Of a stretch of DNA of 39,413 nt, positions 4,549-25,639 are shown piece by piece. How positions within the stretch are numbered: the first letter of the stretch is position 1; each line of letters starts with the position of its first letter. Made by a program: the position numbers and the translations under genes. The stretch spans positions 23,958,609-23,998,021 of the forward strand of contig NC_069006.1 in NCBI RefSeq assembly GCF_001194135.2. The letters are read 5' to 3'. Source of the stretch: Octopus bimaculoides (taxonomy: Eukaryota). The notes below the pieces were generated by a model that was not told the origin of the DNA, ran no database searches, and saw only the letters and a program-made list of their open reading frames with translations.

Positions 4549-4587
<39 letters not shown>

Positions 4588-4679
4588 TAATAATATAAAT
4601 ATATAGATATATGCATATATCCATACATATATGTACATACCTACATCTATATGTATACATACATGCATATGTGGGTACA

Positions 4680-5030: not shown

Positions 5031-5057
5031 TATGAGTGAAAAGATTAATATTAATAC

Positions 5058-5964: not shown

Positions 5965-6310
5965 GTGGAGGCGCAATGGCCCATTGGTTAGGCAGCGGAC
6001 TCGCGGTTTCGATTCCCAGACCGGGCGTTGTGAGTGTTTATTGAGCGAAAACACCTAAAGCTCCACGAGGCCCCGGCAGGGGATGGTGGCGAACCCTGCT
6101 GTACTCTTTCACCACAACTTTCTCTCACTCTTACTTCCTGTTTCTGTTGTGCCTGTAATTCAAAGGGTCAGCCTTGTCACACTGTGTCACGTTAAGGGTA
6201 CACGTATCTGTGGAGTGCTCAGCCACTTGCACGTTAATTTCACGAGCAGGCTGTTCCGTTGATCGGATCAACTGGAACCCTCGACGTCGTAAGCGACGGA
6301 GTGCCACAAG
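5965..6310 (+). mobile_element. tRNA-derived SINE, family A, near full length with small internal deletions
   Basis: A box TGGCCCATTGG, B box GGTTTCGATTCC, body shared with the copies at 1757, 7044 and 25494; ends in a (TA)/(TG) tract. Confidence 0.92.
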
Positions 6311-6347
<37 letters not shown>

Positions 6348-6789
6348 GAAGTGCATATGTTAATGCATGTGTTTTTTTATTGGTTAGAAAGTGTTGCATT
6401 TATATGTAGTTGTGTGTGTGTGTGCGTGCGCGCGCGCATATGAGTGTGTGTGAGAAGAGGGAACGTTCCTGCTTAGATTAGGTTGAAAAAAGAGAGAGAG
6501 AGAAATAATCCTTGTCTGTCGTTGAACTCCCCACCAACACCATAACCCCTTTATTGCCCCAGTCACTCCCTGTTACCACCATCGTCCCCATCACTCCTTC
6601 GTCCCATTAATCAAACAAACAAACCTTACACATTATCAATACCTGCTCTATCTGTATTTAATCTACAATGTTACACAACTTAAGAACACCAATACATTCT
6701 GGTTTCTGTTTACATTTGCATTGGAACTATTTTCTCAAGGTTTCCTGAATTTATAAAGCTATCATTATTATTATTATTGTTATTTTTTT

Positions 6790-7040
6790 TTCTTCTTTCT
6801 TCAAATTTTCCTCCATTTCTCGCCGAGTGTTTTCCGTACACCTAGGGCAGAGACGCTCATTGTACGCATTCCCAGATTACACACGCAAATTCACAGGTAA
6901 AATATGTATTTAAAAAACTTAATAAATAAATTCATGAATGGATGTTGTTTTCACAGCGATAATGCTCTTCTCAGTACATGAGTCGTTCCAGTTAACACGA
7001 CCTTTTGCACTTCCTGTAGGGATGGTAAGCTTGGTATCAT
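6790..7040. repeat. Unclassified interspersed repeat fragment
   Basis: CCATTTCTCGCCGAGTGTTTTCCGTACACCTAGGGCAGAGACGCTCATTGTACGCATTCCCAG resembles a recurrent octopus repeat from memory; single copy here. Confidence 0.3.
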
Positions 7041-7043
7041 TTT

Positions 7044-7352
7044 CAAGTGGCTGAGCACTCCACAGATATGTCTACCCTTAACATAGTTCTCGGGGGAGAT
7101 TCAGCGTGACACAGAGTGTGACAAGGCTGGCCCCCTTTGAAATCACAGGTACAACAGAAACAAGAAGAAAGAGTGAGAGAAAGTTGCGGGGAAAGAAAAC
7201 AGCAGGGTTTGCCCCCCCCCCTCCTGCCAGAGCCTCGTGGAGCCTTAGGTGTTTTCGCTCAATAAACATTCAGAAAATTCAGTCTGGGAATCAAAACCGC
7301 GATCCTATGACTGCGAGTCCACTACCCTAACCACTGGGACATTGTGCCTCCA
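7044..7352 (-). mobile_element. tRNA-derived SINE, family A, 3' tail missing
   Basis: Reverse complement of the 5965 copy, including the head GGAGGCACAATGTCCCAGTGGTTAGG ... GGTTTTGATTCCCAGAC. Confidence 0.92.
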
Positions 7353-7784
7353 TGTATATATATATGCACCTGCATGTTTTGGATTTTCAATGTGTGTATA
7401 TACACACACACACACATGCTGATACCTTCAAGTACACTCCCCAATCTGCTTCCATCACCAGACTTTAAGGAAGTCAGGGATGGGTGGGTACAGGGAACAG
7501 ATACCCATAATCTTCATCCCTGCCGCTGCTTCCTTCACAGTCTTATCCAGCCAGTTTATCTATCTCTGATTACCTGCTTATCTTTTATCCCACTATCGGC
7601 ATCATTCCATCAAACTGAGAAAGAATAAGGGTGGAATAAGGGTAGAAAAAGGGTGAAATGAAGACGGAGTAAGAGTGTTGGGAAGACATAATGATTTCTT
7701 CCTTAGCTACAGGAATACTTTTAGTTTTCTAAGGCAGAGAGAAGTCTCAGCAAGGTAACACAGTCTGCTGGATATTCTGTCCAT

Positions 7785-8050
7785 CCGTCTATCCATCCAT
7801 CCATCCATTGATCCAGCCAGCCAGCCAGCAAGAGAACTAAGGCAACCTGACAACCAGCCAACAAACCAAGCAAGCAAGCAGCCATCAAACTGAACAATCA
7901 GACAACCAATGAAAAATAGCTAACCAATTAGCCAATTAAGCAATCGGGTAACCAGTGAACAAGCCAGCCAATTGGGTTAACTAACAAGACAATCAACTCA
8001 TCAGCTAAACCAGGCAATTAAATCAATTAATCAGGCAATTAACCAATCAA
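7785..8050. repeat. Degenerate tetranucleotide array (TCCA/GCCA/GCAA/ACCA/ATCA)
   Basis: Visible gradient of related 4-mers. Confidence 0.85.
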
Positions 8051-8340
8051 GCTATTTAATGAGGCAGTTAATGAATTAATCTGGCAACTGACCAGTGAAA
8101 TTAATTGTGCAATAAAATGATAATTGTAAATGTGACAAGCTAGAAATATAAATATATGGAGGATGTGGTTCATTAGAATTTGATGTCATCAAATGTTTTA
8201 TTGTTGTCAAAAGGGTCCCAAATGCACTCAGGATATTTTTAGCAACCCTGCTTAATATTATCAACTCGTTGTTGTTACTTGTTACAGGAAAGGCTCTATT
8301 CCAAAAGCAATCACAATAATAACCTTCTGTTTTGTGTGTA

Positions 8341-8745
8341 GGAGTGGCTGTGTGGTAAGTAGCTTGCTTACCAACCACATGGTTCTGGGTTCAGTCCCAC
8401 TGCGTGGCACCTTGGGCAAGTGACTTCTATTATAGCCTTGGGTTGATCAAAGCCTTGTGAGTGGATTTGGTAGATGGAAACCGAAAGAAGCTTGTCATAT
8501 ATATATAATATATGTGTGTGTGCATGTATGTTTGTGTGTCTGTGTTTGTTACCCCCACCATCGCTTGACAACCGATGTTGGTGTGTTTATGTCCTCATAA
8601 ACTAGCGGTTTAGAAAAAGAGACCAATAGAATAAGTACTAGGCTTATAAAGAATATGTTCTGGGGTCAGTTTGTTCGACTAAAAAGGTGGTGCTCCAGCA
8701 TGGCAAGTCAAATGACTGAAACAGGTAAAAGAATAACAGAATAAA
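8341..8745 (+). mobile_element. tRNA-derived SINE, family B, full length with internal (TA)/(TG) tract
   Basis: Head GGAGTGGCTGTGTGGTAAG...GGGTTCAGTCCC (A/B boxes), CCTTGGGCAAGTG segment, internal microsatellite and 3' domain ...GATAGAATAAGTACTAGGC...CAGTCAAATGACTGAAAC shared with the copies at 14285, 34560, 35310 and 36175. Confidence 0.92.
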
Positions 8746-8839
8746 AGAATATATGTGTGTGTATGAATGTTTGTGTACACACACACACACACACACATGA
8801 ATATATATACATGTACACACTCTTACATACACACACAGA

Positions 8840-8871
<32 letters not shown>

Positions 8872-9489
8872 AGGATGTGTTAGTGTAAGAGTGTGTAAGC
8901 ATGTATGCAAGTCTGTAACTTACTGAATCTTTCAAACTTGAATTTTTAAAAATAAATGAATAAAATAAGATAAAACAGAAATCAACAACTGCAACCCCCA
9001 ACCCCCCCGCCAGAGTCTTCCCTCCTCCGAACACTTTTCTTTTTTTCTTTCTTCCCTAAATTCAACTTTGAAAATTTCAGGATATTACGTGTGCCCTCCC
9101 CCCCCAACACACACTCATCTATACATACACACACAGAGAGACAAACACACACAGATACACACAGACACAAACACACACATCTACATGCATACATACACAC
9201 ACAAACACACATACACACAGACACATTCATTCCTACAGCTTCTTCTTCAGGGTGAGAGTTTGTCAGTGTAAATGGTGTGTGGGACATATATTTCATTGTT
9301 ATCTTATTTTGAAAGTTTCCTGACAGCTGGCTGTAGAGCGGCACACTTGAGAATGAGTAGTGTGCGTATGTTAGGAAGAGATAATCTTTTATTTGTATGT
9401 ATGTGTGTGTGTGTGTGTATGTGACTAAGTGATAGCATGTGTTTTTGCACCAATGCTCATATTTATGATAGCATGTTCATATATAAATA

Positions 9490-9897
9490 TCATCGTCATC
9501 ATCATCATCGTTTAACGTCCGCTTTCCATGCTAGCATGGGTTGGACGATTTGACTGAGGACTGGTGAAACCAGATGGCTACACCAGGCTCCAATCTGATC
9601 TGGCAGACTTTCTACAGCTGGATGCCCTTCCTAACGCCAACCACTCTGAGAGTGTAGTGGGTGCTTTTACGTGCCACCAGCACAAAGGCCAGTCAGGCAG
9701 TACTGGCAACGGCTACGCTCAAGATGGTGTATATATATATATGACATATGGCAGCATCCACCTTACATACAGTCACAAAATTTAAGTGAGGTTGAAGGCT
9801 ATAGTAAAAGATGTTTTCCCAAGGTACTTTACAGTAGAACTGAACCTGGAATCATGTGGTTGGGAAGCAAACTTCTTAACCACACAGCCATGCCTAC
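9490..9897 (-). mobile_element. SINE, family D (B-type tRNA head at 9790-9897 plus 3' tail ending in (GAT)n at 9490-9729)
   Basis: Tail matches 31830-32133 and 27104-27475 (GGGCATCCAGCTGTAGAAA...CCAACCCATGCTAGCATGGAAAGCGGACGTTAAACGATGATG); head matches the 8341 head. The tail is probably LINE (RTE-like) derived (inference). Confidence 0.85.
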
Positions 9898-10267
9898 TCC
9901 CTAATAACACAGCTGTGGATGGAACACAACTATTATTCATACACACACACACTATGTTAATCACCACCACCACCACTGCCATCATCTTTACCACTGCCAC
10001 CACCACCACCACCGCCGCTGGACACCAGACATGAGAAGCTGGGATTGAAGTGAAGCAGGAAGACCTACAGGATACAGCGATTTCTTCCCAGGCATCACAA
10101 TCACCACCACCACCGTCTCCCCACTCATCTTTCCCCCCTTCCACCCACCCCACAGCCAAACCAGCAACATCATTTGGAGTGATGAGGAGGCAGCTAGCGT
10201 GCACACCCGCACCCATACACATACAGAGTGGTGCTGTACCCTGAGAGAGGTGTGCATGTGTGTGTAA

Positions 10268-10307
<40 letters not shown>

Positions 10308-10847
10308 AAGAGCTGGGAGTGGGGATATGTGTGGAAACAGGAAGTGTTTCCCATGCTGCTACCAAATTTGATAGTTCAAGGGGCAATCCATCATCCTTCA
10401 GGGGTCAACATTTTATCATCATCATCATCATCATCATCATTATTATTATTACTATCGCAGAGGGAAATGTCACATGTGGTAGGGTGGGGAGGGAGTTGGG
10501 TCCCAAGGTTCACCAATTACACACACACACGCACATGTATAAACACAGACATACATATGAACACATACAAGTCATATATAGACACACACATGCATATAAA
10601 CACACACATATACGTGTATACACACACAGATGCATACGCATTCATATACACGACACATACATCTATGGTAGAAATTCCCCACCAGCAGCGCCACCATCAT
10701 CATCCCCCCACCCCCCACCACCAAGAACTGGCAAACCAGAGAACTGCACCAGGCTCTCTTCTCAGCCCTTCTTTAATGCCAACCACTTTACATAGTAAAT
10801 TGGGTGCTTGTTACATGGCACCGGTACCAGTGCTTTTTATGTGGCAC

Positions 10848-11002
10848 CAGGGCAGGCTCTAGGGTTGCTGGCACCCCAGGCATGCTGAACTTCGGTGCCC
10901 TTACAAGTATAATTTTTAAGGAGAAAAACTGAAAGTGTGGCCTAAAAAACACACGGCACCCAGGGTGACTTCCCAAGTTGCTGGTACCTTGAGCTGGCCC
11001 TG
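10848..11002. mobile_element. hAT-superfamily MITE, 155 bp, nested in a family-D SINE fragment
   Basis: TIRs CAGGGCAGGCTCTAGG / reverse complement CAGGGCCAGCTCAAGG (13/16). Flanking 8-bp TSD TGTGGCAC (10840-10847) / TGTGACAC (11003-11010); an 8-bp TSD is typical of hAT elements. Confidence 0.8.
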
Positions 11003-12059
11003 TGTGACACCAGCATTTTTTTGGGGGTCCCCAAATAATGACGTTTTGAGCCTAAACTCTTTGAGAGAAAGAAATGACAGGAAAATAAAATGGAGAGAGA
11101 ATGACAAAAGGAGGAGGGTGAAGACGGTGATGATAATGTTGATGATGATGATGATGACGATATTACTGGGGAAGGAGGTGGTGATGAAGGTGATGGGGGA
11201 TCATAGTGAAGATGATGACGATGAAGGTAATAGATAGAAAGGAAGGTGATGGTGATGACGGTATTGGTTTTCATTTGCGCTGCCAGTGATAATGAGGATG
11301 GTGATAATAACAATGATTACAATGGTGGTGGTGGTTGTCTTGATGATGACGATGATGATGATGACAGTGATGGTGGTGGTGGTGGTGACAATTATGAAAG
11401 ACTCCAGGTCAGAAAGACTTTTACAGGTAAACCATCATGTGATTGCTAGAACATTGCAAACAGGTTTGTCTCAAACAAATACCCTCACATGCTACACCCC
11501 CCTCCCCCCACTCTGCCTTATTTGTAAACACTTGCATGTGTATACACAGAAACATACACACACACACACACACACACAAAAACATATGCGAGCACAGTGA
11601 TGCTTATGAATACACACACACACAAATGAACACACAGAACCACAAACATACACATATGCACATTAAGAAACATGCACACATATATATGAACACACAGAAA
11701 CACACACACTCATATGAACAAACAGAAACATATACACACACACACAGAATCATACACATGTGCGCACACATAAGTATACACACACACACACACACCGAGT
11801 CCTCTGCTGAAGTGTGCCTATGACAATAACAATTATTTCTTTTCTTTTTAATAACAAGAGACAAAGGCAGGAATTATAAGCACACGTGACCTTTAACTCC
11901 CCCCCCNNNNNNNNNNNNNNNNNNNNNNNNNNNNNNNNNTCTCCAATCACTTCTCTCTACCTACCACTCCCCTCCCATCCCCCTTGCCATGCAGTCATAA
12001 TAAACTATCAATAGACAATATCTGATTCATGAAAGTCACATGGTACTGGAGGGGGGATG

Positions 12060-12093
<34 letters not shown>

Positions 12094-12519
12094 GGTGGGG
12101 TGGAGGAAGAGGGTGTTGCTGGTAACAAGTTGAGTCTCAAGAAAACTGGAGAAACATGAGAGATACAACAAGGAACCCAAGAAAGAAACCGCTTTTTTTT
12201 TTAAATTCTTGTAAACATCTTCAGAGGAAAGATTGAAACCGTATCGCCATCTCCATTTGTTGTTAAAGATGCAGGGGCAGATAATAAGGAGATGTGGTGG
12301 TAGTAGAGAGCAGAAGGGGTAGCGTAGTGCATTGAAGTGTGGTGGCAGTGTAGCAGTGTGGTAGTTGCTGTTATAGTTTAGCAGTGCTGATGTATATTGG
12401 TGGTGTGGAGTCGGGGCAGGGGTAGCGGTAGACAGGGGTTGGTTCTTGAGGTCTAAGTAGGAACCCTTGATTATCTGCTGGGTTCCTACAGCAGATAATC
12501 TGTAGGAACCCAGCAGAGG

Positions 12520-12691
12520 GGAACAGCTGATTACATTGACCCTAATACTTAACTGGTACTTAATTTATCGACTCCAAAAGGATGAAAGGCAAAGTCGACC
12601 TCGGCAGAATTTGAACTCAGAACGTAACGGCAGACGAAATACAGCGAAGCATTTCGCCCGGCGTGCTAACGTTTCTGCCAGCTGTCCACCT
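12520..12691 (-). mobile_element. tRNA-derived SINE, family C, 3' end replaced by an inverted-duplication cluster
   Basis: GAAGGTGGACAGCTGGCAGAAACGTTAGCACGCCGGGCGAAATGC...GAGTTCAAATTCTGCCGAGGTCGACTTTGCCTTTCATCCTTTTGGAGTCGATAAA on the minus strand. Confidence 0.9.
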
Positions 12692-13627
12692 TCACATACC
12701 TATTTAATAATAATGACAAAAATATTTGACTAAATTCCTCAATATTTTCAAAATTAATTGAAACAAAAGCAGTGTATCTCAACAGAATTAATGTTCTGTT
12801 AAAATCAAGGTGTTGATGGTTGTCTATAGAATAAAGGCAGGGGTTCTGTGATTTTGTTTTTTGGGGAAATCATATATGGATGGGATCTGAGTAAAGTATG
12901 TGTGGGAGCTGCTGGTCTAATCTGGTGGAATAGGGAACGGTGTTGGCGCTGTGGTGAAGTATTTGGTGTGATATGCCTTGTGGAGGGAACGATGTAAAAG
13001 TGCAGTGGTGTGGAGGGCATGTGGCAAAGGGTTGGAAGAACAAGGAGGCGCAGTGGAGGAATGTGGAGTGGGTGGTGTCTGGTGAATTCGGCGAGGAGGT
13101 GGGATGCTGAAGAGGGATGGTTAGTGAGGGTGCACCATGGTGAGGAGACGGAAAGGCTAGGAGATGCAATGGACGGATGCAGAGGTGAGTGGTGTGTGAT
13201 GCTGAAGTCGGTAGGGTGGGGTGTTGATGGTGTGGGGGTGTTGTCAGTGTGGGAGTGTTGTGTCGGAGTGTTGTCGGTGTTGGGGTGTTGTGGTGTGGGA
13301 GTGTTGGTGGTGAGGGGGTGTTGGTGGTGTGTGGCTGTTGCTGGGGGGTGGTACGGGGCACAGTGATGCATCAACGGTGTATATGAAGGAGAGTGGCATG
13401 TGGGTGCAACATGGGCCGTAGTTAGGTATGGAGATGGGCAAGGAGTTATGGGTGGTGTAGATTGGTATGGTGGTGCAGTACCATGACATGGACGGGAGGC
13501 GGCGGAGGTGGTGGGAATGGATATTGTAAATAGCTGAGTGACTGTAGTTTGTTTAGAAAGAACATCACCCCTTCTGTAAACAGGAGTGATGGCTGATGAT
13601 TGATGACATTGACAACGGTTATGAAGA

Positions 13628-13850
13628 TTGATGATGATGATGATGATGATGAAGATTGATGATGATGGTGATGATGATGATGATCAGAAGATAACTATGA
13701 AGTTGATAATGATGATGATGATGATAATGATGATGGTGATGGTGGTGATAACAGTGATGATGATAATGGCTATAATTATGACGATGGTGATGGTGATGAT
13801 GAAGACTATGATGATGATGGTGGTGATGGTGATAGTAATGATGATGATGC
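13628..13850. repeat. Degenerate (GAT/GGT)n trinucleotide array
   Basis: Directly visible; source of the poly-Met/Asp/Ile ORFs. Confidence 0.95.
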
Positions 13851-14284
13851 TGGGTTTTATCATACCTGACACATTAAGAAAGCTAAAATGGTGGAAAGAC
13901 AATAAATAGTAAGGTGATGATGTCAGTGGAGGTGGCGTGAAGGTATTCAGTGGGATTGCATTAAAAGAAATAGTTTTTAATGTTTTACCGGGTTTTTTTT
14001 CTCTTTGCCTTTCCCTTATTACATGTTGTTTATTTTATGCTATACATACATATATATATAAATATATATATATATATGGTGTTTGTTTTATCTTTCAGTT
14101 TTGTTGTTGCTGTTGTTGTTGTGTGTTGCATGGCAACAAGCAAGCAGCCGGCAGAGTAGCATGAAGGGCGATGGTGTAACAGTTAAACAGTAGAAGAAGA
14201 AAAATGACACATAGAGGAATGGATGAAGCATTAGGAGGCTACCAGTGCACAGATCTCAAGTTCAACTCTCCAGACAGCGTTTCA

Positions 14285-14362
14285 AAGTGTGTCTGTGTCC
14301 CCCCCCCTCCATCACTTGACAACTGATGCTGGTGTGTTTATGTTCCCACAACTTAGCAGTTC
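14285..14362 (+). mobile_element. SINE family B, internal fragment
   Basis: CCATCACTTGACAACTGATGCTGGTGTGTTTATGTTCCCACAACTTAGCAGTTC matches 8555-8610; truncated at the Tigger relic. Confidence 0.8.
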
Positions 14363-14369
14363 AACTGGC

Positions 14370-14625
14370 TCGAGAAGGAACAAACAACAATATTATATCC
14401 GTTTTCTGAATCACTTTCACTCGCATCAGACTCATGCACAGCATCACTTGTAGATGCGATTGCTGATTCACAAGAACTCGTAGACGGACTTGGTAGATTT
14501 CTTTTTAAGAAAGAGGTCTAGAGTTGTTTGCTTAGAAGAAGCCTTTTTTTTCGCTCTCCCATTTCTTGGAAACTTTTGCACTTCGTTCAAAATTTGGGTC
14601 TTGTTCTTGAAAACTAAAACTTGTA
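14370..14625 (-). mobile_element. Tigger/pogo-type transposase C-terminal relic (frameshifted)
   Basis: Minus strand gives FQEQDPNFERSAKVS, then after a frameshift KKKASSKQTTLDLFLKKKS and an acidic/Ser tail (SDAVHESDASESDSE). This matches the remembered Tigger/TIGD-type C-terminus (QDPN.ER..KV ... KK.T.QT.LD.FF). Confidence 0.7.
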
Positions 14626-15047
14626 AATTCAGGGTCTCTTAAAGTGTCTCAGAGATTATTTAAGTGTCTCAGAGATTATTTAAGAAGCAGAGACCAAAAT
14701 CTTCACAAGACTTGAATGGAAAGAGGAAGCTTTGTCTTTTCAGAGATAATCTACAAGTAACATCCACATTAGAAGAAGTACAGGTCTTTATTTGCTGGAT
14801 TTATGGCCAAATCTCTAAGCTGAGGATTAGAGTTTGGAATAATTTCCATTACTCAACCACCATAGGAATTCTCCAGTCTGCAATACTGACAGAGGCCACC
14901 TGCTGCATATTTACACACACATACACATACACATGCATACTCACACACACACACACACACACAATAAAGATGTGTGAGAAATATTTACAAGTGCAGTGTA
15001 GGTGTGTAGGTGTGTGTGTGTATGTGTTCACAATTGTGAATATGTAA

Positions 15048-15078
<31 letters not shown>

Positions 15079-15389
15079 NNNNNNNNNNGAGAGAGAGAGA
15101 GAGAGAGAGAGATTACTTACCCAGGTACAAGTCCATACACATTTTCATGTAAAGACTGATCGACACCTGGCAGTGAGAGGTTTATTTCAGTGAAAAGAAT
15201 GTTGTTAACCAAGAGTTATTTTTACCCGGGTGTTTATAGAGAACGTGCTAGTATCAATACACATTAACACACTCCTGCCCTGTATCTACCCCATATTTCT
15301 ACCCAGTTCCTCTTTACTGCATTATTAAACAAAACACAACACAGTGTACTCTGCTTTACACAGCTGCCATTTCAACATTATTGTAAAAG

Positions 15390-15730
15390 TAAGGACTCCC
15401 CACCCCCTGGTCACGAATGACCATCAGATTGCACCTAGAAAGTTCCCCTCTGGGGCACAAATCTGGGCAAGGTTGTTTATGGAAGACCAGCAGTCACCCA
15501 TGCATACCAGCCTCCCCTCTCCACACCACTAAAGTTATCCAAGGGAAAGGCAAAGGGGCCAATACAGCTTGGCACCAGTGATGCTGCAACTCATTTCTAC
15601 AGCTGAATGAACTGGAAACTGTGAAAAAAAGACTTGCTCAAGAACACAACACACAGCCTGCCCAGGGAATCAAACTCACTACCTCATGATTGTGAGCCTG
15701 ACGCTTTAACCACTGAGCCATGTGCCTTCA
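15390..15730 (-). mobile_element. tRNA-derived SINE, family E, near full length
   Basis: Minus-strand head GAAGGCACATGGCTCAGTGGTTAAAGCGTCAGGCTCACAATCATGAGGTAGTGAGTTTGATTCCC (A box TGGCTCAGTGG, B box GAGTTTGATTCC), followed by a ~270-nt body. Confidence 0.85.
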
Positions 15731-15888
15731 GCATTATAGTAATATGTTTAGAAAACAAAAGTTCACCTTTACCCCATCTTCATACACAGGGCTGCATGAT
15801 ACAGGCACATACTTGACTTCCTTTAGTGCAGATGGTGCACCATTGCTGTTTCACTCTTAGGAAGAATGTCATTGACAAGTGATGTTGC

Positions 15889-15983
15889 ACTTACCTGTGG
15901 AAAGAAAAGAAGAAACAAAAAAAAAAATGGATATAAAAGAGAACAAAAAGAAAACAAAACAAAAATCTCATCCAAGGTTAGTA
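15889..15983 (-). other. Strong 3' splice site (branch point + polypyrimidine tract + CAG) immediately followed by GTAAGT; candidate recursive splice site
   Basis: TACTAAC at 15983-15977, ~70 nt T/C-rich tract, CCACAG ending at 15895, then GTAAGT at 15894-15889. Confidence 0.55.
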
Positions 15984-16566
15984 AAAATGAGTACCAGTCA
16001 TATTCCTGGGTGAAAGTTGATTTGGTTGACTGCATGCCTTTCCCTGAAAATGTATAGCTTTGTGTTGGTGTGAGAAATCAACCCAAACACAGTACTGCAA
16101 ACAACAGCAACCACCACCACCACCACTATGACCATCATTACAACTACTTAGATCAGTTTCGGCCGGAGTTGTCCCAGTCCATGGCTAACTTAAAAGCATC
16201 ACTACTACTACTGCTACAAACATTAATACCACCACCACCACAATTACGACTCATTTCCAGACGAAGCTTCCACCCCCAAGGGGTACGGTTTTTGTTGTTA
16301 TTACTAGCAACCAGGCAAAACAAGGCGCCACCATTCCCCACCACTCTCTACACTCAGTAAACTCAAACGCTGAAGGTTAACCCTAACTTGTATAATAGAG
16401 AGCAGTTTTAATCACTCCTAATCCCCATCTCAGCCATTTTAATGACAGAATCACCGAGACAAGGAAGGGCACCTTTTACTGGGGTACCATTTTTTGACTG
16501 CATGTGGCTGCTGCCACTGCTTCTCCTGTTGCTAAAGTCTGATTATGTAAGTAATTATAAAATTTG

Positions 16567-16940
16567 ATATTGTTGTATTTGGGGATGGTCATTTTGCCAA
16601 TGAACGCACAACACACACACTGTTTATTTGATCTTCACTTTATCAGCATAGTTCTTTCATCACATATTGAGACCTCTTCAATGATTATCTGCTTTTTTTT
16701 TTTGTTTTTGTGTCTCCTCTCATCTCTGGTCGTGTCCTGTCTATTTCACAGGACAAGAACAGAAAGAAGTGGAAACATGGAGAATAGGCAGTCATTGAAG
16801 GGGTCACAAAATATGTGACAAAAGACCTCTAACAAATAAACAATAACAATTGCTAATAATGGTAAAGCTGAAGTGAAGGTCATATAAATAATGCACGTGT
16901 TTAATTGACGTAAGACGACCATCCCCGAATATAACAATAT
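16567..16940. mobile_element. Fold-back (palindromic) MITE-like element
   Basis: Left arm ATATTGTTGTATTTGGGGATGGTC... versus reverse-complemented right arm ATATTGTTATATTCGGGGATGGTC...; similarity continues inward to TGTCCTGT-CTATTTC-ACAGGACA at 16733-16755. Confidence 0.8.
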
Positions 16941-17157
16941 TTGTTTCAACACACGATTTCCCATCAAGAAACTTGCAAAACAAATACATTGATTAGGAAT
17001 AGTCTTTCCACTGTCAAACCCAGCACCGGATTAACCATTAAGCAAAATAAGCACGCGTTTAGAGCATCAAGGGACAAGGGCACCACAGAAATGGTAAATG
17101 GTTTACGGCACAAAAGAAATCACTTTGAATTTGCTAAAATAATATTTGTAATGCCTT

Positions 17158-17280
17158 AAGGTGGTGAGCTGGCAGAAACGTTAACATGCCAGGTGAAATG
17201 CTTGGTGGTATTTCGTCTGTCTGGGACTGAACCCAGAACCATGTGGTTGGTAAGCAAGCTACTTACCACACAGCCACTCC
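17158..17280. mobile_element. Tail-to-tail fusion of a family C 5' fragment (+, 17158-17222) and a family B head (-, 17223-17280)
   Basis: The B head is identical over 58 nt to 8341-8398; the C fragment matches the starts of 32136 and of 12691 (minus). Confidence 0.85.
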
Positions 17281-17286
17281 TGTGCC

Positions 17287-17318
<32 letters not shown>

Positions 17319-17979
17319 TACATATGCATACATATATGCACACACACACATACACACGCATTGTCTAAAACCATGCTCGCCTAGATTGTAATAATATTGT
17401 GTTTGATTAGGAACAAGTTCATCACCATATGACACCGTGATCAGGGTGTGTGGGTGTGCATAACGACTGGATGGAGAAGGTGGGGGTGGGGGTAGATTTA
17501 AGTGGAAAACAAGATGTTCAGTTATATACACAAACTACTGTGTGTAGAAGCAAGACAGATGGCTGGGTCGTGTTTTCACACTGGAGACCCGAGGAAACAT
17601 TTAGGTACAATTACACTCAGCTACACATGTTGTGCATGTACATTCTACACACAGTAGTTGTCTGAACAGACTGGCAAAACTACGTGTATATATACATATA
17701 TATACACACACATATATGGTTGGTTTGTTAAATAAATAGAGAACATAATTTACTCAAGAACCTTGCAGCTGCTGGTGTTGTATTGGACACCATAGCATGC
17801 ACACGCACATACACATGTACACACATACAAACGTACACACGCATGCACATATACACATACAAACGTATAGACATGTATATTTCCTTGTGTTTTATATTTG
17901 AAATCTCTCACCAATGGAGAAAGAACTGGGTTCTAGTCTGGAAACAAGACTCTTTCATTGGAATTACTTATTTTTGCCA

Positions 17980-18097
17980 GCAGAGTAAATTGAAGCAACA
18001 CGAAATGAAGTGTTTGGCTCAAGAATACAATGCATTGTCTGGTCGAGGAATTGAAACCACAATCTTACAATCACGAGTGCAACATCCTAACCATTGA
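17980..18097 (-). mobile_element. tRNA-derived SINE head fragment (family E-like)
   Basis: Minus: GACTCAATGGTTAGGATGTTGCACTCGTGATTGTAAGATTGTGGTTTCAATTCC...CATTGTATTCTTGAGCCAAACAC. Confidence 0.7.
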
Positions 18098-19219
18098 GTC
18101 AAGCATCTCTGCAATGTTCTATGNNNNNNNNNNNNNNNNNNNNNNNNNNNNNNNNNNNNNNNNNNNNNNNNNNNNNNNNNNNNNNNNNNNNNNNNNNNNN
18201 NNNNNNNNNNNNNNNNNNNNNNNNNNNNNNNNNNNNNNNNNNNNNNNNNNNNNNNNNNNNNNNNNNNNNNNNNNNNNNNNNNNNNNNNNNNNNNNNNNNN
18301 NNNNNNNNNNNNNNNNNNNNNNNNNNNNNNNNNNNNNNNNNNNNNNNNNNNNNNNNNNNNNNNNNNNNNNNNNNNNNNNNNNNNNNNNNNNNNNNNNNNN
18401 NNNNNNNNNNNNNNNNNNNNNNNNNNNNNNNNNNNNNNNNNNNNNNNNNNNNNNNNNNNNNNNNNNNNNNNNNNNNNNNNNNNNNNNNNNNNNNNNNNNN
18501 NNNNNNNNNNNNNNNNNNNNNNNNNNNNNNNNNNNNNNNNNNNNNNNNNNNNNNCTTGGAATGAAAGAGGTGGGGGTGAGTTAGTGAGTGTAAGAGAGTA
18601 AGTATATTTATGTCTGTCTGTGTGTGTGTGTGTGTTGGTGGTGGGGTATGGAGCGGGGGTGGGGAGCAGGGGGAGGAGGCACAAGAGAAAGACAGAAAGA
18701 GAAAAAGTAAACCAGTGGCAAACGTGGACAGACAGACAGGCAAACAGACAGGCAGACAAACAGACAGACAGACAGGCCTCTTCCCCAACTTCCTGAAGAG
18801 TTTATAGTTAGCATGGGTCTTTCTATTATTTTTTTTGTATTCTTCAGTAGCAGCTCTACAAACCCAGAATGGAAGTTTGTGTGAGTGAATGTGTGTGTGT
18901 GCATGTGTATATGGGAAGTGTGTGTGTGTGTGTGTGTATGCATGGGAAGTGTATGTGTGTATATATGTGTTTTTGTATGTGTATGTATATGTATGGGTGT
19001 ATGTGTGTGTATGTATGGAGAGTATGTTTATGTATGTGTGTGTGTGGAGGAGGAGGTGAAGGAGGAGAAAGAGGAGGGGTCACATCTATCAGCTTCCAAG
19101 TCTCCAAACATTATCTGAGAGAAGTCAGAAACCAAATGCTACGGCAGAGAGGACAGGTAGAGCAGGGACGCAGTGGGGGGCACGGCTGGGAAGGACTAGT
19201 AGAAATGGTGACATGGGGG

Positions 19220-20150
19220 TGGGGTGGAGATGATGGTGGTGGGTGGTGTTGGCGATGGAGATGTTGGTGATGGTAGCAGTGATAGGTGCAGGGTGGGAGG
19301 GTTTATGGTGGTGATTGCATGGAGGTGGTGGTGATGATGACATGGTGGTGGTGGCGGTGCAGATAATGACATGGTGGTGGTGGTGATGGTAGTGATTGGT
19401 GAAATGTGATAGTGAGGGTGGAGGTGATGACGACGACGACGACGACGACGACGATGATGATGATGCCTGTTGCAAGGATGAAGATTATGACATTAACAAT
19501 GGTAGTAACGTGTCTGGTGCTGGTGGCAGCCAATCTATTGGTGGCGGAGGTGGAAGCAGCAGAAGCAGAGGTATCAATGAAAGTATTAAGTGATGGTGGT
19601 GGTATCAACCAATGCGTTAATGTTAATAGGGGGTGGTGTTGGTGGAGTAACAGGGGTCTCCTTCTCTACATGTTATGGTGACGGTGGTGGTAGTGGTGAT
19701 GATGATAATGGTGGTGGTGGCGGTGGTGTCAAACGAGGGAGTTAATACAGTGATGGCAATAAAAGTAATGGTATTGGTATTAGCGGCAGTGGTTTATAAC
19801 ATAATGTGGATAATAACAGGGGTGGTCTACATGTTGTCTTAAAAACCCGTGGTGGTGGTCGTGGTGTGGCAATAATAGAGATCGAGGGTGGTCTACATGT
19901 GTTAACAGCAGAGGTGAAGGTGGTGGCAGTAGTGGCAGTGGTGGTGATGATGGAGATGGTTGTAGTGGCGATGGCAGAAGATCCTGGTGATAATGGAGAG
20001 CCGGTGGAGATGATGGGGGGGGGAATTCGTGGTGGTGGTGGTGATGACAGAGGTGGTGGTGGTGGCGGTGGAGAAGGAAATGGCAATGGTGGTGATCAGG
20101 ACGATGATGATGATGATGATAACAATGGCGGTAGTGGTGATGACAAGACA
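19220..20150. repeat. Long degenerate (GGT/GAT/GAC)n low-complexity block
   Basis: Directly visible; gives overlapping poly-Pro/Gly/Thr/Val ORFs on both strands. Confidence 0.9.
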
Positions 20151-22039
20151 GTCGGAAAAGTGTGAATGCTTAAAGAAACTATTACCACCACCACCAACAC
20201 CACCATTTTTAAATAATCGTCTTTGTTTTAGACATGTACCCCTCATTCTTTTTTTCTTATGACTTCTTTTTCAAAATGGTACATGAAGAATTTGCAGAAA
20301 TTTGTCTGCTAACAGGTCAAATGGCCTGTGGTGCCTCTGTGTGTGTGTGTCAAAAGATCAGAAAACAAGCTGATAGTGGTGGTGGTGGTGGTGATGACGA
20401 TGATGATGATTATGTAATGGAACAGTGGTGTTGGTAGTGGTGATGACGATGACGATGATGATGATGATGCCAGTTATGTACACATGGAGAGTGAAGGAAG
20501 AACTAAGCACATTTCATGTTGGTATTCAGTGATGCGCGCATGCTTCCTGTAGAAACACAGCATGGCAAGGGACAGGGAGGGTCGGGGGAAGACGAGATGC
20601 TGCTGTCAACCCTCAGTGAACAGAAATGCGATCAAAGACATTCTGACCACGACTACCCGTTTGCATAATCGTCATAGTGGTGTTGGTTGTAGCAGTGATG
20701 TTGATGGTGATGATGGTGGTGGTGGCGGTGGTGGTGGTGGTAGCATTGACAAACGTTTGATGGTGGTGAGTAAATGAAAGGTGAACAGCTTCATGCAAAA
20801 GTAGGGAGGTAGTGTGTATATGTGTGTGTATATGTGTATGTATGTATATATATATATATATATATATATGACCATCTCTTCATTCTTTTGATTGATAGAC
20901 AGATAGATAGAAAGATAGATAGACAGACAGATAAACAGACAAACAAACAAGCAGATAAATAAATAGATGGACAGATAGATAGATAGACAGACAGACAGAC
21001 ATATAAATATACATATATTCAAGCTGGTAGGGAGTGAGTTAAAGGAAAATTTACGTCTATTTCTAGCAGACTGCATGACCACACAGAAGCTGCCTCCCTA
21101 TGTAGTTGATGTATGTGCAGAAAATAAATTGCTAGCAGTGGTGATAGTATGGCGGTAGTACTACACAGTAAAGATGGTGGTGGTGATGACGATGATGATG
21201 AGGGTGGTGGTGATGATGATGATGATGTGGGTGATGGTGGTGATACATATAGTTAAGACATAGGGATAGACAAGCTGACTTTTATCAGTACAGTTCAGGG
21301 AGATGCTGGCCTGGAGTTTGAAGCAGGAGTAAGCTGTACAGGGGCAATACCCTTACCCCGACCCCAACACCGTTCCTTTCTATTTTACCCCCATTTTACA
21401 TCTAACCAAGGACTGTAATCAGATAGTAAAGTTATAACGTAAAGAACAAGAAAACAAACAAACAAACAAAACGAAATATATACAAAAACTGAAGACTGGA
21501 GTATAACAAAACCTGGTTAGTTGGCTGGGTGTAAGGGTAGATGCAATGGAGAAGCTGGGTAGACGGGATTATGGTGATAAAACACACGCATTCAGTCACA
21601 ACATAGATATGTACAGAAATCCGAGACACACACTAATAAATAAACACATGCATAAGTGCACACACACATGCATAAACACACACATATACAATTAGTCACA
21701 GCATAAATATGTACTGAAACATACACACACAAACATACATAAAAACACATGCACACAGACATGCATAAGCACATATATGCATTCAGTCACAACAGAAATT
21801 TGAGACACACACAGCCACTCACATACATGAACACTAGCAAATACATGCATAACATACACATACAATACATACACACAGTCGGCACTTTCAAGTGAGAGAT
21901 GCCCCAAGTGCAAACACAATCAGGAACTTGGTTCATCGTTTTTAGAAACAAGGGGCAGTAAGTGATCTCCCACAACATGGGAGACCTCACCCTGTCAGAA
22001 CCGATGATATAGCTGACCGTTGACTGAACACTATTCAAT

Positions 22040-22319: not shown

Positions 22320-22497
22320 GATGTGATGGAGGCATTAAAAGGCATCCCTTTGCAAGAGTTGCAGCAGAAAACATGCCTGGACTGATGCATTACTTCAAAT
22401 GGAGAATATTTTGAAGGTGATAAAAGTGTAAACATGTAAAACTAAGTGGATAAAATAATATTGTGAAATTCCGGTTTCTTTTGGGTACTCCCCTGTA
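22320..22497 (+). mobile_element. mariner transposon 3' end with TIR and TA target
   Basis: VMEALKGIPLQELQ-QKTCLD*CITSNGEYFEGDK is the mariner C-terminus (..WKKR.DKCIASNGEYFEGD type). Terminal ATTCCGGTTTCTTTTGGGTACTCCCCTG + TA (22496-22497). The 5' side is lost in the gap and (TA)n. Confidence 0.85.
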
Positions 22498-22569
22498 CAT
22501 GAATACATACACACACACACACACACACATACATACATATATATATAACACCATGCATACAAGTCTCTA

Positions 22570-23012
22570 TGTGGTTGTTCAACCTGTTAATGCAATTTGC
22601 AATGTTCAAAGACACTGAATGGTAAAGAGGAAGGACACATTAAATGATGCAGTCCCAGGTACACAATATCCAAAAAAGTAGATGAGATGGTCACCATTTG
22701 GTCATAGGTTCTGCTCAATCATTACTGACCTGGGGCTGAACAACAAAATCAACAACAACAGCAACAACAACTACACATGATACAACACAGAAGCCTTTCT
22801 TGTTGCTTGATCTGCTAGAAATAGCAGTCAAATCTCCCTCAAACTATATCTTACTGTTTAACAAAAAAACACAGGAACGACACATTAAATAATGTAGTCT
22901 CAGGTACACAATACCTAAAAAATAGATGAGATGGACGATGTTGGAATGCATTTGATCATGGGTTCTGCTCAGTCATTAATGTCCCGGGGTTAAACAACAA
23001 CAACAACAACTA
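22570..23012 (+). mobile_element. Two tandem degenerate copies of a (CAA)n-tailed SINE-like repeat (family F)
   Basis: Shared GACACATTAAAT..T.CAGT..CAGGTACACAATA....AAAA.TAGATGAGATGG...GGTTCTGCTCA.TCATTA..G.CC.GGGG.T.AACAAC in 22570-22770 and 22790-23012; an inverted fragment (CTATTTCTAGCAGA) lies at ~21045-21110. Confidence 0.7.
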
Positions 23013-24454
23013 CGACATACTTATGAACACCATAGCCCCACATCCACATTACATTCGCCCCCTTCTAAGGCAGGGCAGGGTGGCAACAGATTGATTATGT
23101 TGGAATATTAAGAGGGGTTAAGAAGAAAAGTGTTGGGTGTCACAGAATTGCTCCCTAAATGATTCTCAATCTCACGTTTCCTCCTTGTACCGGAAACTCC
23201 TTTGATAATATGTGAGCTTGCTCTTTCTCCTCTCCCGCTCCACCCCAGGCTCTCCACTGCCAGGCATCGTCTTACTTCTTCCCTCGTTAACCCAGGCAAA
23301 AAAAGAAAAAACAAAAACAAAAACAAACAAGAAAACTCTAGAGACTAAAAAAAAAAATTATTGTATGTATTTAACACAATTATGTATGGTAATTAGTAAT
23401 TTGAAATAAAAACATTAGTTAATTTGATTTTCTTTTATATGTGTTTTAAACATTCTATATAATATCATATTAACAAATATTTTCATGTTTGCATTAAAAA
23501 ATTGTCTGCTAATTATAAAACATAGACAACAAACATACATATACACATACACCTATACATACACCTTTTCTTATACACACACACACACATTTAAATGTAC
23601 AAAGAAAGGAAAGGTGAACTCAACACACTGTATATGACTTATATTTGAAAATTAAAAGTTATCGGAAGAAACAGGCAGAATGTTAAGCTATGTAATTGTA
23701 GTGAATGTCTTTCCGAGAAATTATATACTAAAGCCTTCCACATTGTCCATTACCAGAAAATCTAGACAAAGATCTCTGGCAATTATTGATGAGGTTCTCT
23801 GGTAAAGAAAGCGTAAACAGAATATTGCAGAAAGTGGAGAGTGCTCGTCTGTGGCACTGTGATGTGATCTGTGGCACTTTTCTGGAAAGGATATTTGTTT
23901 CTTTCTGTCTGACTGTTTATCTATGCAATAGAAGGTGCATAGAAAATGCTTGACAGTACAGTAACCTAAAGGACCATAAGTAGTGAGGGAGTTGGGGAGA
24001 TGAACAACTATATGCATGTAAGTCAGCAGATGTGTGTGTGTGTGTGAGCATGTATGCCCATGTGTATGTGAGAAGGTGTTTGAATGAGTCTGACTATGTA
24101 TATGTATGTCAGTGAAAAGTAAAGAGTGTGTGTGTATGTGCGCGGGTATCTGGTGTATACAGATTAAAATGGAAATGTAAAGAATGAGAAAAATTAAGTC
24201 AAACAATGTATTTTGTGGTGTGAAAAAATGAATTAGAGCAGTGAGAAATTTAGAGAAGAATAAACTATGTGACCTTCAATTTCTTGTTCTTTTTTCATTC
24301 TTTTCAAACTGGTTTTATGTACATTTTTTCATGTTAACACTATAAAAGCCTAGCGTGAATGATTTCTGACACTTGAACACAATTATGTGGCAGGCAAATA
24401 ATTATATTATATGGTTGCTGCAGAATTATTGGTATTTGAATAACCACAACAATG

Positions 24455-24680
24455 ATAATAATAATAATAATAATAATAATCCTTTCTGCTATTGGCACAA
24501 GGCCTGAAATTTTGGGGGAAGGAGGAAGTTGACTACATTGACTCCAGTATTTATTTTCATCAACCCCGAAAGGATGAAAGGCAAAGCTGACCTTGGCGGA
24601 ATTTGAACTTAGTAAGGACAGATGAAATGCCACAAAGCATTTTGCCTGGCATACTAACGATTCTGCCAGCTCGTTGCCTT
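24455..24680 (-). mobile_element. tRNA-derived SINE, family C with (TTA)n tail; a second 3'-only fragment lies at 24730-24792
   Basis: Homologous to 5058-5272 and 32136-32352. Confidence 0.88.
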
Positions 24681-25493
24681 AATAATAATAATAACATCAA
24701 TAACAACAATAAGGACAATCATAATTAATAATGGTTTCAAATTTTGGTACAAGGCCAGCAATTTTGGGGGAGGGGATGAGTCAATTACATCGAAAGTTTG
24801 CGAAATGTTTTGTTGAGTGAGTGTAGTGTAAAACAAGAGGCAAAACAAATAATTAATTTGAAGGTTTGTTTTCAGTGTTACTGTTGGTGAAACAGATTTA
24901 TTCTGTAATAGGAGACTTATTTTAATGGACTGAACACACGATTTGTGCAACCAGATTATAAGAAGAATAAAATTTAAAAAACAATAACAAAATAACCAGC
25001 ATGATATTTGAGATAGTTTCAATTTACCAGTTTGCAAAACAAAACAAAACAGCAAAAAAAAAAAGTGTTGTCATGGGCAACGATCAATTACTGTTTTTCT
25101 GTTAATTTTAATTACATAAGCATTTTGTTTGTTTCTTGTATTTTTGTCTTAATTTTTTTTTTATCAAACAGAGCAAAGTCTAAGAAGTAGCAAGACTCCT
25201 GATTATCAAAACGAAGGCAAACCATCAATTTGGGGGTCGTTAATACCAGTCTCTTGTTTCACAAATGTCTTTTAAGAAAGTTATGAGTATCACCTAATCT
25301 TGTTCACCCCTTTTATAAATTTCTACCCTTGACTGCATTTCAAATATTCCTCCACCCAAACTCTGAGATAAAAAGATTATATTTGCCATAAATACAGGAA
25401 AATAGAAGCCTTATGCAATAAGGAAACTATTGTAGAATATCCTACACAGGGCTATAGATATTTATGGTAAAGAATAACAGTTATTAGTATAAT

Positions 25494-25639
25494 TGGCACT
25501 CCATTGGTTGGGACAAGGAGCTTCCCAGTTATCTGATCAACAGAACAGCCTGCTTGTGAAATTAATGTGCAAGCAGCTGAGCACTTCACAGACCCTTAAT
25601 GTAGGTCCCAGGGAGAACCACTAGACCACGTGCCTCCAC
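25494..25639 (-). mobile_element. SINE family A, old internally deleted copy (5' tip joined to 3' half)
   Basis: GTGGAGGCACGTGGTCTAGTGG head tip followed by GAAGTGCTCAGCTGCTTGCACATTAATTTCACAAGCAGGCTGTTCTG...GGAGTGCCA. Confidence 0.75.

What the first reader, a model, noticed from the sequence alone, without database searches (positions are those of the whole stretch)
15807..15983. Candidate recursive-splicing ratchet point with a poison RS-exon (minus strand)
Seen: a perfect TACTAAC branch motif (15983-15977), then ~70 nt of T/C-rich DNA with no AG except one just after the branch site, then CCACAG|GTAAGT (junction 15895/15894). A second donor, AA|GTATGT (15812-15807), would close an 82-nt exon with stops in all three frames. 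Established: YAG|GTAAGT junctions followed by a short cryptic exon are the hallmark of recursive splicing in long Drosophila and vertebrate neural introns. Inference: this window is part of a very long minus-strand intron removed stepwise; I do not know of this being described in cephalopods. Alternative: an ordinary terminal exon that begins with GTA (VSATSLVNDILPKSETAMVHHLH*). Caveat: poly-T tracts are common in this genome.
Basis: partly seen in the sequence, partly recalled or inferred. Interest (0 to 1): 0.75.

Follow-up and report, generated by a model that had tools for sequence, protein, structure and literature searches.

The report
Real rare exon starting with GTAAGT
The flagged CAG|GTAAGT is a genuine splice acceptor that opens a rarely included, stop-filled 122-base exon deep inside long introns, so it has the anatomy of a "recursive-splicing exon", but the recursive step itself has not been seen.

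Summary
A strong acceptor context directly followed by GTAAGT is expected only about 0.001 times per window by chance.

RNA contigs from three runs of the source species show that the site is used. One joins 55 nt of foreign sequence to 15894, and another joins 120 nt ending in ...CAACA(AG). A third runs from 15895 to 15773 and then jumps to a downstream exon.

The real exon is therefore 15894-15773 on the minus strand, 122 nt long. It has stops in all three frames and is not a multiple of three. It is single-copy, evolves at least as fast as its flanks, and appears in only 3 of 15 contig-kept RNA runs.

None of the three partner sequences lies in the window, so the flanking introns exceed 15.7 kb and 23.5 kb. 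Joining to ...CAACAAG recreates AAG|GTAAGT, which matches the donor consensus 9/9, against 5/9 for the exon's own donor.

This meets the sequence definition of a putative RS-exon. Use of the regenerated donor could not be tested, because there were no sawtooth, lariat or skip-junction data. The host gene is unidentified.

This is a new member of a known kind, of moderate interest.

The parts
15977..15983 (-). TACTAAC, candidate branch point (branch A at 15978), 82 nt upstream of the acceptor AG
   Evidence: Sequence only; use as a branch point was not tested. It reads TACTGAC (15979 changed) in the orthologous contigs of runs X16 and X17. TACTAAC frequency in the window equals chance.
15897..15966 (-). 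70-nt AG-free polypyrimidine tract (61 of 70 pyrimidines)
   Evidence: Only 5 of 3,983 AG sites in the window have a comparable tract. It is low-complexity sequence that matches thousands of other loci (contig word depth 2,000-6,500).
15895..15896 (-). AG of the 3' splice site; splice junction at 15895/15894
   Evidence: The X27 contig matches 15799-15894, then continues for 55 nt unlike the window. The X26 contig matches 15774-15896, then continues for 120 nt unlike the window.
15773..15894 (-). 122-nt internal exon (putative RS-exon). Stops in all three frames, length not a multiple of 3, single-copy
   Evidence: Perfect-match RNA contigs in X25, X26 and X27 at depth 2.7-5.2. Translation. 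DNA word depth 12.6, the single-copy level. It differs at 5.7-9% of positions in related species, against 1.5-4.5% in the upstream flank.
15889..15894 (-). GTAAGT at the 5' end of the exon. With the upstream exon ...CAACAAG it recreates AAG|GTAAGT, which matches MAG|GTRAGT 9/9
   Evidence: Sequence plus the X26 loose end. Unchanged in four related genomes, but that is expected by chance with P about 0.45. Its use as a donor was not observed.
15767..15772 (-). GTAAAG, the donor actually used by the exon (GGG|GTAAAG, 5/9 match to consensus)
   Evidence: The X25 contig matches down to 15773, then carries 28 nt of a downstream exon (minus-strand sense TTTGTTAACCCCGAGCAGATTGGTTATG). The -2 position reads A (GAG|GT) in X16 and X17.
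15807..15812 (-).
   Evidence: Contigs X25 and X26 run uninterrupted through it. The site carries substitutions and 6-nt insertions in related species.
15621..15735 (-). High-copy repeat, SINE-like by eye, in the downstream intron 37 nt after the donor (context only)
   Evidence: DNA word depth up to 32,450 against 12.6 for single-copy sequence. Abundant in RNA contigs. ARAGORN and Rfam find no match.

Best explanation
Shown:
- CAG|G at 15895/15894 (minus strand) is a working 3' splice site.
- It opens a 122-nt internal exon (15894-15773), which is closed by the weak donor GGG|GTAAAG.
- The exon is joined to at least two different upstream partners and to one downstream exon. All three lie outside the 39-kb window.
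- The exon is rare in RNA, has stops in all frames and shows no sign of constraint.

Inferred:
- The exon is recognised by exon definition, through a very strong acceptor (long pyrimidine tract, CAG) and the downstream donor.
- It is first ligated to the upstream exon. With the partner ending ...CAACAAG this recreates a consensus donor, AAG|GTAAGT.
- That donor matches the 5' splice-site consensus MAG|GTRAGT far better than the exon's own donor (9/9 against 5/9 positions). In most molecules it should therefore be used for a second splice, which removes the exon together with the downstream intron. That is recursive splicing through an RS-exon.
- The contigs seen here would then be the minority that used the weak donor. 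They would give a non-productive or non-coding isoform.

I put the reality of the exon at about 0.9. I put the re-splicing step at about 0.5.
For: - Junctions fall exactly at AG|G and G|GT in three runs from two studies, and the exon is single-copy.
- The partner sequences are absent from the window at up to 3 mismatches. The introns are therefore longer than 15.7 kb and 23.5 kb.
- The regenerated donor matches consensus 9/9 against 5/9 for the exon's own donor.
- In flies, competition between the two donors decides whether an RS-exon is included. [quoted passage not shown]
- Any exon that rebuilds a 5' splice site at the preceding junction counts as a putative RS-exon (PMC6224609).
- Inclusion is rare. 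Exon words are held by 3 of 15 contig-kept RNA runs of the species, at depth 2.7-5.2. There were no reads in three sampled raw runs.
- There are signs of low-level unspliced transcription of the region. X26 has a perfect 151-nt contig at 13886-14036. X26 and X48 hold 9-11% of the words of 22400-29100, against 2-3% in other runs. A related species has unspliced contigs across the site.
Against: - No product or intermediate specific to recursion was seen. There is no lariat with its 5' end at 15894, no sawtooth and no measured skip junction.
- Every RNA molecule observed retains the exon, including one with the perfect AAG|GTAAGT junction. The regenerated donor is therefore not always used.
- In human cells 94% of putative RS-exons are constitutively included, because the exon junction complex blocks the regenerated donor.
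- The motif is unchanged in four related genomes, but that is uninformative (P about 0.45 by chance).
- The host gene is unknown. A peptide spanning the hypothetical skip junction matches nothing among 5.8 billion proteins, so 'poison exon in a coding sequence' is unsupported.
Confidence: 0.5

Rival explanations
1. This is an ordinary, rarely recognised cassette or cryptic exon (a pseudoexon, or a lineage-specific alternative exon of a UTR or lncRNA) in a long intron. The GTAAGT at its start is coincidental. It is not used as a donor, or it is blocked after ligation. The exon is missing from most transcripts simply because it is usually not recognised at all.
For: - All RNAs seen contain the exon, including one with the AAG|GTAAGT junction.
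- Expression is very low.
- The exon body shows no constraint, and the motif conservation is uninformative.
- Tens of strong-acceptor-plus-GTAAGT conjunctions are expected genome-wide by chance (my arithmetic).
- 3.6% of human exons rebuild a 5' splice site, and most of them are not recursively spliced.
Against: A consensus donor placed next to a much weaker competing donor is expected to be used. Strong acceptor, long introns on both sides, an out-of-frame unconserved short exon and a weak downstream donor together form the described anatomy of cryptic RS-exons.
Confidence: 0.4
2. The contigs are artefacts (chimeric assembly, genomic DNA or a paralogous copy), and the site is a chance motif in DNA that is not spliced.
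For: The contigs are short (151-243 nt) and shallow (depth 2.7-5.2). Two of them are one read length long. The raw RNA runs show no reads.
Against: Three runs from two studies break exactly at AG|G and G|GT, with perfect identity inside the exon. The exon is single-copy in DNA. Genomic DNA would continue colinearly, as the contigs of the related species do.
Confidence: 0.04
3. This is the reader's alternative: an ordinary terminal coding exon beginning with GTA and encoding VSATSLVNDILPKSETAMVHHLH*.
For: That frame is open for 23 codons.
Against: The exon is internal. Contig X25 leaves it at 15773 for a downstream exon, and no contig continues into 15772 and below.
Confidence: 0.01

Closest known systems
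Cryptic RS-exons at intronic ratchet points of long Drosophila introns (Burnette 2005, Duff 2015, Joseph 2018/2021, as summarised in PMC8605326)
   Same: Both have a tandem acceptor|donor (Y-tract CAG|GTAAGT) in long intronic sequence. Both have a short downstream exon closed by a weaker donor. In both, the exon content is unconserved and out of frame.
   Different: The fly exons are about 50 nt and almost never appear in mRNA, and their motifs are ultraconserved with sawtooth and intermediate evidence. Here the exon is 122 nt and is seen in mature-looking RNA. Conservation is only testable at about 5-9% divergence, and no intermediates were seen.
Vertebrate RS-exons in long neural genes (Sibley 2015, e.g. 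CADM2; recalled from memory and as cited in PMC6224609 and PMC8605326)
   Same: In both, the RS-exon is defined first and the regenerated 5' splice site competes with the exon's own donor. In both, the RS-exon carries premature stops and is included in a minority of isoforms, with alternative upstream exons. Two upstream partners are seen here: ...AAG| and ...AAC|.
   Different: The host gene, tissue and intron length are unknown here. There is no evidence that inclusion depends on which upstream exon is used.
Expressed or annotated putative RS-exons (Ubx mI/mII; about 3.6% of human exons, Blazquez 2018, PMC6224609)
   Same: [quoted passage not shown]
   Different: Those exons are mostly constitutive coding exons protected by the exon junction complex. 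This one is rare, stop-filled and unconstrained.
Pseudoexons and poison exons in long introns (e.g. DMD pseudoexons, PMC7175933, listed and not read)
   Same: It is a low-frequency, non-productive exon in a very long intron.
   Different: Such exons do not generally begin with a consensus donor. Regulated poison exons are usually highly conserved (my knowledge), and this one is not.

Membership tests
Recursive splice site (ratchet point) with RS-exon | Juxtaposed 3' splice site and 5' splice site, (Y)n CAG|GTAAGT | tested here: met
   a 70-nt tract with 87% pyrimidines and no AG, then CAG|GTAAGT. About 0.001 such conjunctions are expected per window.
Recursive splice site (ratchet point) with RS-exon | An upstream exon is spliced to the first base of the GTAAGT in vivo | tested here: met
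   the X27 and X26 contigs join foreign sequence at 15894 and 15896. X26's partner ends ...CAACA(AG).
Recursive splice site (ratchet point) with RS-exon | Location within a long intron | tested here: met
   none of the three partner 28-30-mers is in the window, so the nearest exons are more than 15.7 kb and more than 23.5 kb away. Caveat: 3,148 N in assembly gaps.
Recursive splice site (ratchet point) with RS-exon | A downstream 5' splice site defines an RS-exon | tested here: met
the donor GGG|GTAAAG at 15773/15772 gives a 122-nt exon.
Recursive splice site (ratchet point) with RS-exon | The regenerated donor is stronger than the RS-exon's own donor | tested here: met
   Matches to the MAG|GTRAGT consensus are 9/9 (AAG|GTAAGT) or 8/9 (AAC|GTAAGT), against 5/9 (GGG|GTAAAG). 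This is a consensus count, not a MaxEnt score.
Recursive splice site (ratchet point) with RS-exon | The regenerated donor is actually used: a second-step lariat with its 5' end at the site, sawtooth intron coverage, and intermediates exceeding inclusion | not testable with these tools
   The raw RNA runs gave zero reads on 15726-16200. The other runs are only available as contigs. The read-laying runs are exhausted.
Recursive splice site (ratchet point) with RS-exon | The RS-exon is normally excluded from mRNA | tested here: inconclusive
   The exon is in 3 of 15 contig-kept RNA runs at depth 2.7-5.2. The skip junction lies outside the window and could not be counted.
Recursive splice site (ratchet point) with RS-exon | The acceptor|donor motif is strongly conserved while the exon body is not | tested here: inconclusive
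   positions 15889-15897 are unchanged in four genomes of related species. With 25 of 297 sites variable, that is expected by chance (P about 0.45). The exon body is 5.7-9% diverged.
NMD 'poison' cassette exon of a coding gene | An internal exon that introduces a premature stop or a frameshift | tested here: met
   122 nt (3n+2), with stops in all three frames.
NMD 'poison' cassette exon of a coding gene | It lies between coding exons of a protein-coding gene | tested here: inconclusive
   the peptide read across the hypothetical skip junction (TFGKLLTGNKFVNPEQIGY) shares no words with any of 5.8 billion proteins. Other reading frames were not tested. The host gene is unknown.
Terminal (last) exon | No downstream donor is used, and the transcript ends in or after the exon | tested here: not met
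   X25 splices from 15773 to a downstream exon.

The most novel reading that the evidence does not exclude
The site is a true, routinely used ratchet point. The rare 122-nt inclusion would be leakage or a switch coupled to the choice of upstream exon. I know of no described case of recursive splicing outside insects and vertebrates. No paper in the library holds both 'recursive splicing' and 'octopus'.
Probability: 0.25. Interest if true: 0.55.

Novelty: new member of a known kind. Interest (0 to 1): 0.4.

Why it matters
If the regenerated donor is used, this locus is a concrete, primer-ready case for asking whether recursive splicing exists in a third animal lineage.

The exon, both junctions and three partner sequences are now defined. 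RT-PCR for intermediates, lariat sequencing and donor mutagenesis can therefore be designed directly.

If the donor is not used, the finding is an ordinary cryptic exon. It then shows that motif-only calls of ratchet points need junction and lariat evidence.

Tried and rejected
- **Whole-window repeat search:** dominated by microsatellites and of no use for this site.
- **Self-BLAST of 15400-16400 against the window:** no second copy of the exon or the tract.
- **Raw RNA reads:** at 95% likeness, 97% of the reads laid were partial repeat matches. At 98%, none lay on 15726-16200.
- The plan to look for further exons or intronic reads in 1-20000 and 22400-29100 therefore failed.
- **Host gene search:** protein searches with the 19-aa peptide were rejected for their settings or length. 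The X-padded query found no candidate.
- **Extending the window with the look-up of encoding contigs:** two end ORFs were not on record.
- **Open reading frames:** six-frame translation of the window (stop-to-stop stretches of 50 aa or more) gives only low-complexity sequence, so there is no coding exon to anchor a gene.
- **Structured RNAs:** ARAGORN on 15500-16100 and Rfam on the whole window found nothing.
- **Second AGGTAAGT at 1677-1670:** rejected as a ratchet-point candidate because it has no pyrimidine tract.
- **Exonised antisense retroposon idea:** I considered whether the exon and tract are an antisense retroposon whose A-tail supplies the tract. The exon body is single-copy at 85% identity or more in five genomes, so there is no support.
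- **Possible lariat read:** X27's partner ends ...GCACAAC, which is unusual for an exon end. It could be a lariat branch junction rather than an exon. This cannot be decided because its genomic position is outside the window.

Full report
**1. Observation**

On the minus strand the window reads TACTAAC (15983-15977), then cttggatgAG. A 70-nt AG-free tract follows at 15966-15897, with 61 of 70 pyrimidines. Next comes CCACAG|GTAAGT, with the junction at 15895/15894, and further on GTATGT at 15812-15807. The 82-nt stretch it proposed does carry stops in all frames.

TACTAAC by itself occurs at the chance rate: 2 in the window against 2.0 expected. AGGTAAGT occurs twice against 0.93 expected. The conjunction is what is unusual. 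Only 5 of 3,983 AG dinucleotides on both strands have at least 85% pyrimidines upstream and an AG-free zone of at least 40 nt. GTAAGT occurs at 2.3e-4 per position, so about 0.001 such coincidences are expected per window. By my arithmetic, and assuming a genome of roughly 2.7 Gb, that still allows tens of chance cases genome-wide. The motif alone therefore proves nothing.

The second AGGTAAGT (1677-1670, minus strand) has no pyrimidine tract.

**2. What the RNA shows**

Public runs of the source species are coded as 'organism A'. They were found.

Three large raw RNA runs (X24, X44, X45) were sampled at about 6% each. They gave no read at 98% identity or more on 15726-16200. At 95%, 97% of the reads laid on 13500-18500 were partial repeat matches.

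A search with only the unique core (15735-16095) showed that three RNA runs of organism A hold 10-20% of its words: X25 and X27 from study P13, and X26 from study P14. Twelve other contig-kept RNA runs of organism A hold none.

Laying their contigs on the region gave three perfect-match pieces with clean breaks:
- **X27:** a 151-nt contig covers 15799-15894. It then continues for 55 nt unlike the window. In minus-strand sense this reads ...ACGCCAAGTCTGTCACATACGTTGCACAAC|GTAAGT.
- **X26:** a 243-nt contig covers 15774-15896 and continues for 120 nt unlike the window. This reads ...TTACGTTTGGGAAACTGCTCACAGGCAACA, then AG, then GTAAGT. The partner exon therefore most simply ends ...CAACAAG.
- **X25:** a 151-nt contig covers 15895-15773. 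It then carries 28 nt, TTTGTTAACCCCGAGCAGATTGGTTATG.

The breaks fall at AG|G (15896-15895 | 15894) and G|GT (15773 | 15772-15771). Those are GT-AG boundaries only when read on the minus strand.

The site is therefore a real acceptor. The exon it opens is 15894-15773, 122 nt long, closed by GGG|GTAAAG.

The exon is internal, which refutes the 'terminal exon' alternative. It is single-copy: DNA word depth is 12.6, against 32,450 in the neighbouring high-copy repeat.

**3. Context**

None of the three partner sequences occurs in the window at up to 3 mismatches. The neighbouring exons are therefore more than 15.7 kb downstream and more than 23.5 kb upstream, unless they are hidden in the 3,148 N of assembly gaps.

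Six-frame translation of the window (stop-to-stop stretches of 50 aa or more) yields only low-complexity sequence. Rfam finds nothing.

There are traces of unspliced transcription:
- X26 has a perfect 151-nt contig at 13886-14036.
- X26 and X48 hold 9-11% of the words of 22400-29100, against 2-3% in other RNA runs.
- In a related species (organism D), three RNA runs of one sample each contain colinear, unspliced contigs over roughly 15633-16106 at depth 6-12.

The host gene is unknown. A peptide read across the hypothetical skip junction (TFGKLLTGNK|FVNPEQIGY) shares no words with any of 5.8 billion proteins. So there is no evidence that the neighbouring exons are coding in that frame. The transcript may be a UTR or a non-coding RNA.

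**4. Properties of the exon**

- Its length is 122 nt (3n+2), with stops in all three frames.
- Its own donor, GGG|GTAAAG, matches MAG|GTRAGT at 5 of 9 positions.
- Ligation to ...CAACAAG rebuilds AAG|GTAAGT, a 9/9 match. Ligation to ...CACAAC rebuilds AAC|GTAAGT, an 8/9 match.

Orthologous DNA contigs came from four runs of three related species labels:
- Positions 15889-15897 are unchanged in all four. With 25 of 297 alignable sites variable, nine invariant sites are expected by chance with P about 0.45.
- TACTAAC reads TACTGAC in X16 and X17.
- The donor reads GAG|GTAAAG in X16 and X17.
- The exon body differs at 5.7-9% of positions, against 1.5-4.5% in the upstream flank. The exon sequence therefore shows no sign of constraint.

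**5. Mechanism**

Shown: use of the acceptor, the exon, its donor, two upstream partners, one downstream partner, and rarity in RNA.

Inferred: the exon is defined by its strong acceptor and weak donor and is joined to the upstream exon. The rebuilt consensus donor then out-competes the weak donor, so the exon is usually removed in a second step.

This inference follows the donor-competition model established by mutagenesis in Drosophila. In that model, cryptic RS-exons are short, unconserved and out of frame (PMC8605326).

It also fits the operational definition of a putative RS-exon as any exon that rebuilds a 5' splice site at the preceding junction (PMC6224609).

That second paper also supplies the main caution. 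About 3.6% of human exons meet the definition. Of those, 94% are constitutively included, because the exon junction complex blocks the rebuilt donor.

Here one observed molecule keeps the exon despite a perfect AAG|GTAAGT junction. No sawtooth, lariat or skip-junction measurement was possible.

I put the reality of the exon at about 0.9. I put re-splicing from the rebuilt donor at about 0.5, and a routinely used, evolved ratchet point at about 0.25. The main rival is an ordinary, rarely recognised cryptic exon whose GTAAGT is incidental, at about 0.4.

**6. Comparison and novelty**

The anatomy matches cryptic RS-exons of fly ratchet points and vertebrate RS-exons. It differs in three ways: the exon is longer (122 nt against about 50 nt), it is visible in RNA, and it lacks demonstrable deep conservation.

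It fails no defining feature that could be tested. The decisive feature, use of the regenerated donor, was not testable.

No paper in the searchable library combines 'recursive splicing' with 'octopus'. One paper mentions 'cephalopod' in passing. I could not verify the species name because the tools code it.

This is a new member of a known kind, of moderate interest.

**7. Caveats**

- The contigs are short and shallow, and two of them are one read length long.
- Contig depth is a poor measure of expression.
- The strand is inferred from splice dinucleotides, not from stranded reads.
- X27's partner ends ...CACAAC, which is atypical for an exon end. It could even be a lariat branch junction, but its genomic position lies outside the window.

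Noticed in passing
window 15621-15735 (minus strand): A very high-copy repeat lies 37 nt downstream of the exon's donor. By eye it has tRNA-like A and B boxes, so it looks like a tRNA-derived SINE. DNA word depth reaches 32,450 against 12.6 for single-copy sequence, and it is abundant in RNA contigs of several species. ARAGORN and Rfam do not call it.
   Followed up: partly
window 17174-17340: This repeat has an enormous RNA signal: raw depth about 1,100-1,700 and contig word depth 137,000-224,000. Its upstream continuation is consistent in all runs (TAGAAGACACTTGCCCAAGGTGCCACGCAG before 17222, agreement 0.76-0.93). It is an abundantly transcribed repeat family next to a TA/CA microsatellite.
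   Followed up: no
window 15337-15620: This is another repeated element. RNA contig word depth is about 800-14,000, and many variant positions are shared across species.
   Followed up: no
window 15633-16106 in organism D RNA runs X31, X29, X40: A related species has colinear, unspliced RNA contigs across the exon, tract and flanks, at depth 6-12 in three runs of one sample. No spliced form was seen there. The contigs end in the high-copy repeat and in a GGT microsatellite. This could be pre-mRNA, a retained intron or a different transcript structure in that species.
   Followed up: partly
window 15735-16100, runs X15 and X17: Two runs carry the same species label (organism B) but clearly different orthologous sequences. 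X15 shares its variants with organism D (X20), and X17 shares its variants with organism C (X16). This suggests mislabelling or a species complex.
   Followed up: no
window 15982-16019: Just upstream of the TACTAAC, DNA depth rises slightly (16-20 against 12.6). One DNA contig shares this stretch and then diverges at 15982, which lies inside the TACTAAC, into ...TCGACTCGAAATGATGAAAGGCAGAGTCGA (minus-strand sense). The sequence around the candidate branch point may therefore be an old fragment of a dispersed repeat.
   Followed up: no
window 9492-9732 and 31894-32134; also 1897-2076 and 6001-6180: There are long inverted repeat pairs: 241 nt at 95% complementarity, 22 kb apart, and 180 nt at 88%, 3.9 kb apart. 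They are probably copies of dispersed elements in opposite orientation.
   Followed up: no
window 11100-11400, 13680-13860, 19230-21260, 35840-36030: Extensive imperfect GAT/GGT/GAC trinucleotide-repeat tracts are all G-rich on the plus strand. They account for the strong GC-skew blocks in the composition profile.
   Followed up: no
window 14120 and 16507: All three raw RNA runs show 150-220 reads that match about 21 nt on each side of an apparent 2,386-nt skip, with the same 21 inserted letters (CTCCTGTTTGATATTGCTGCT). The ends are GT..TG, so this is not a canonical intron. It is most likely an abundant transcript from elsewhere that shares short repeat words.
   Followed up: no
window 1670-1677 (minus strand): This is the second AGGTAAGT in the window, on the same strand. 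It sits in TA-rich sequence with no pyrimidine tract, next to an assembly gap, and is not a credible acceptor.
   Followed up: yes
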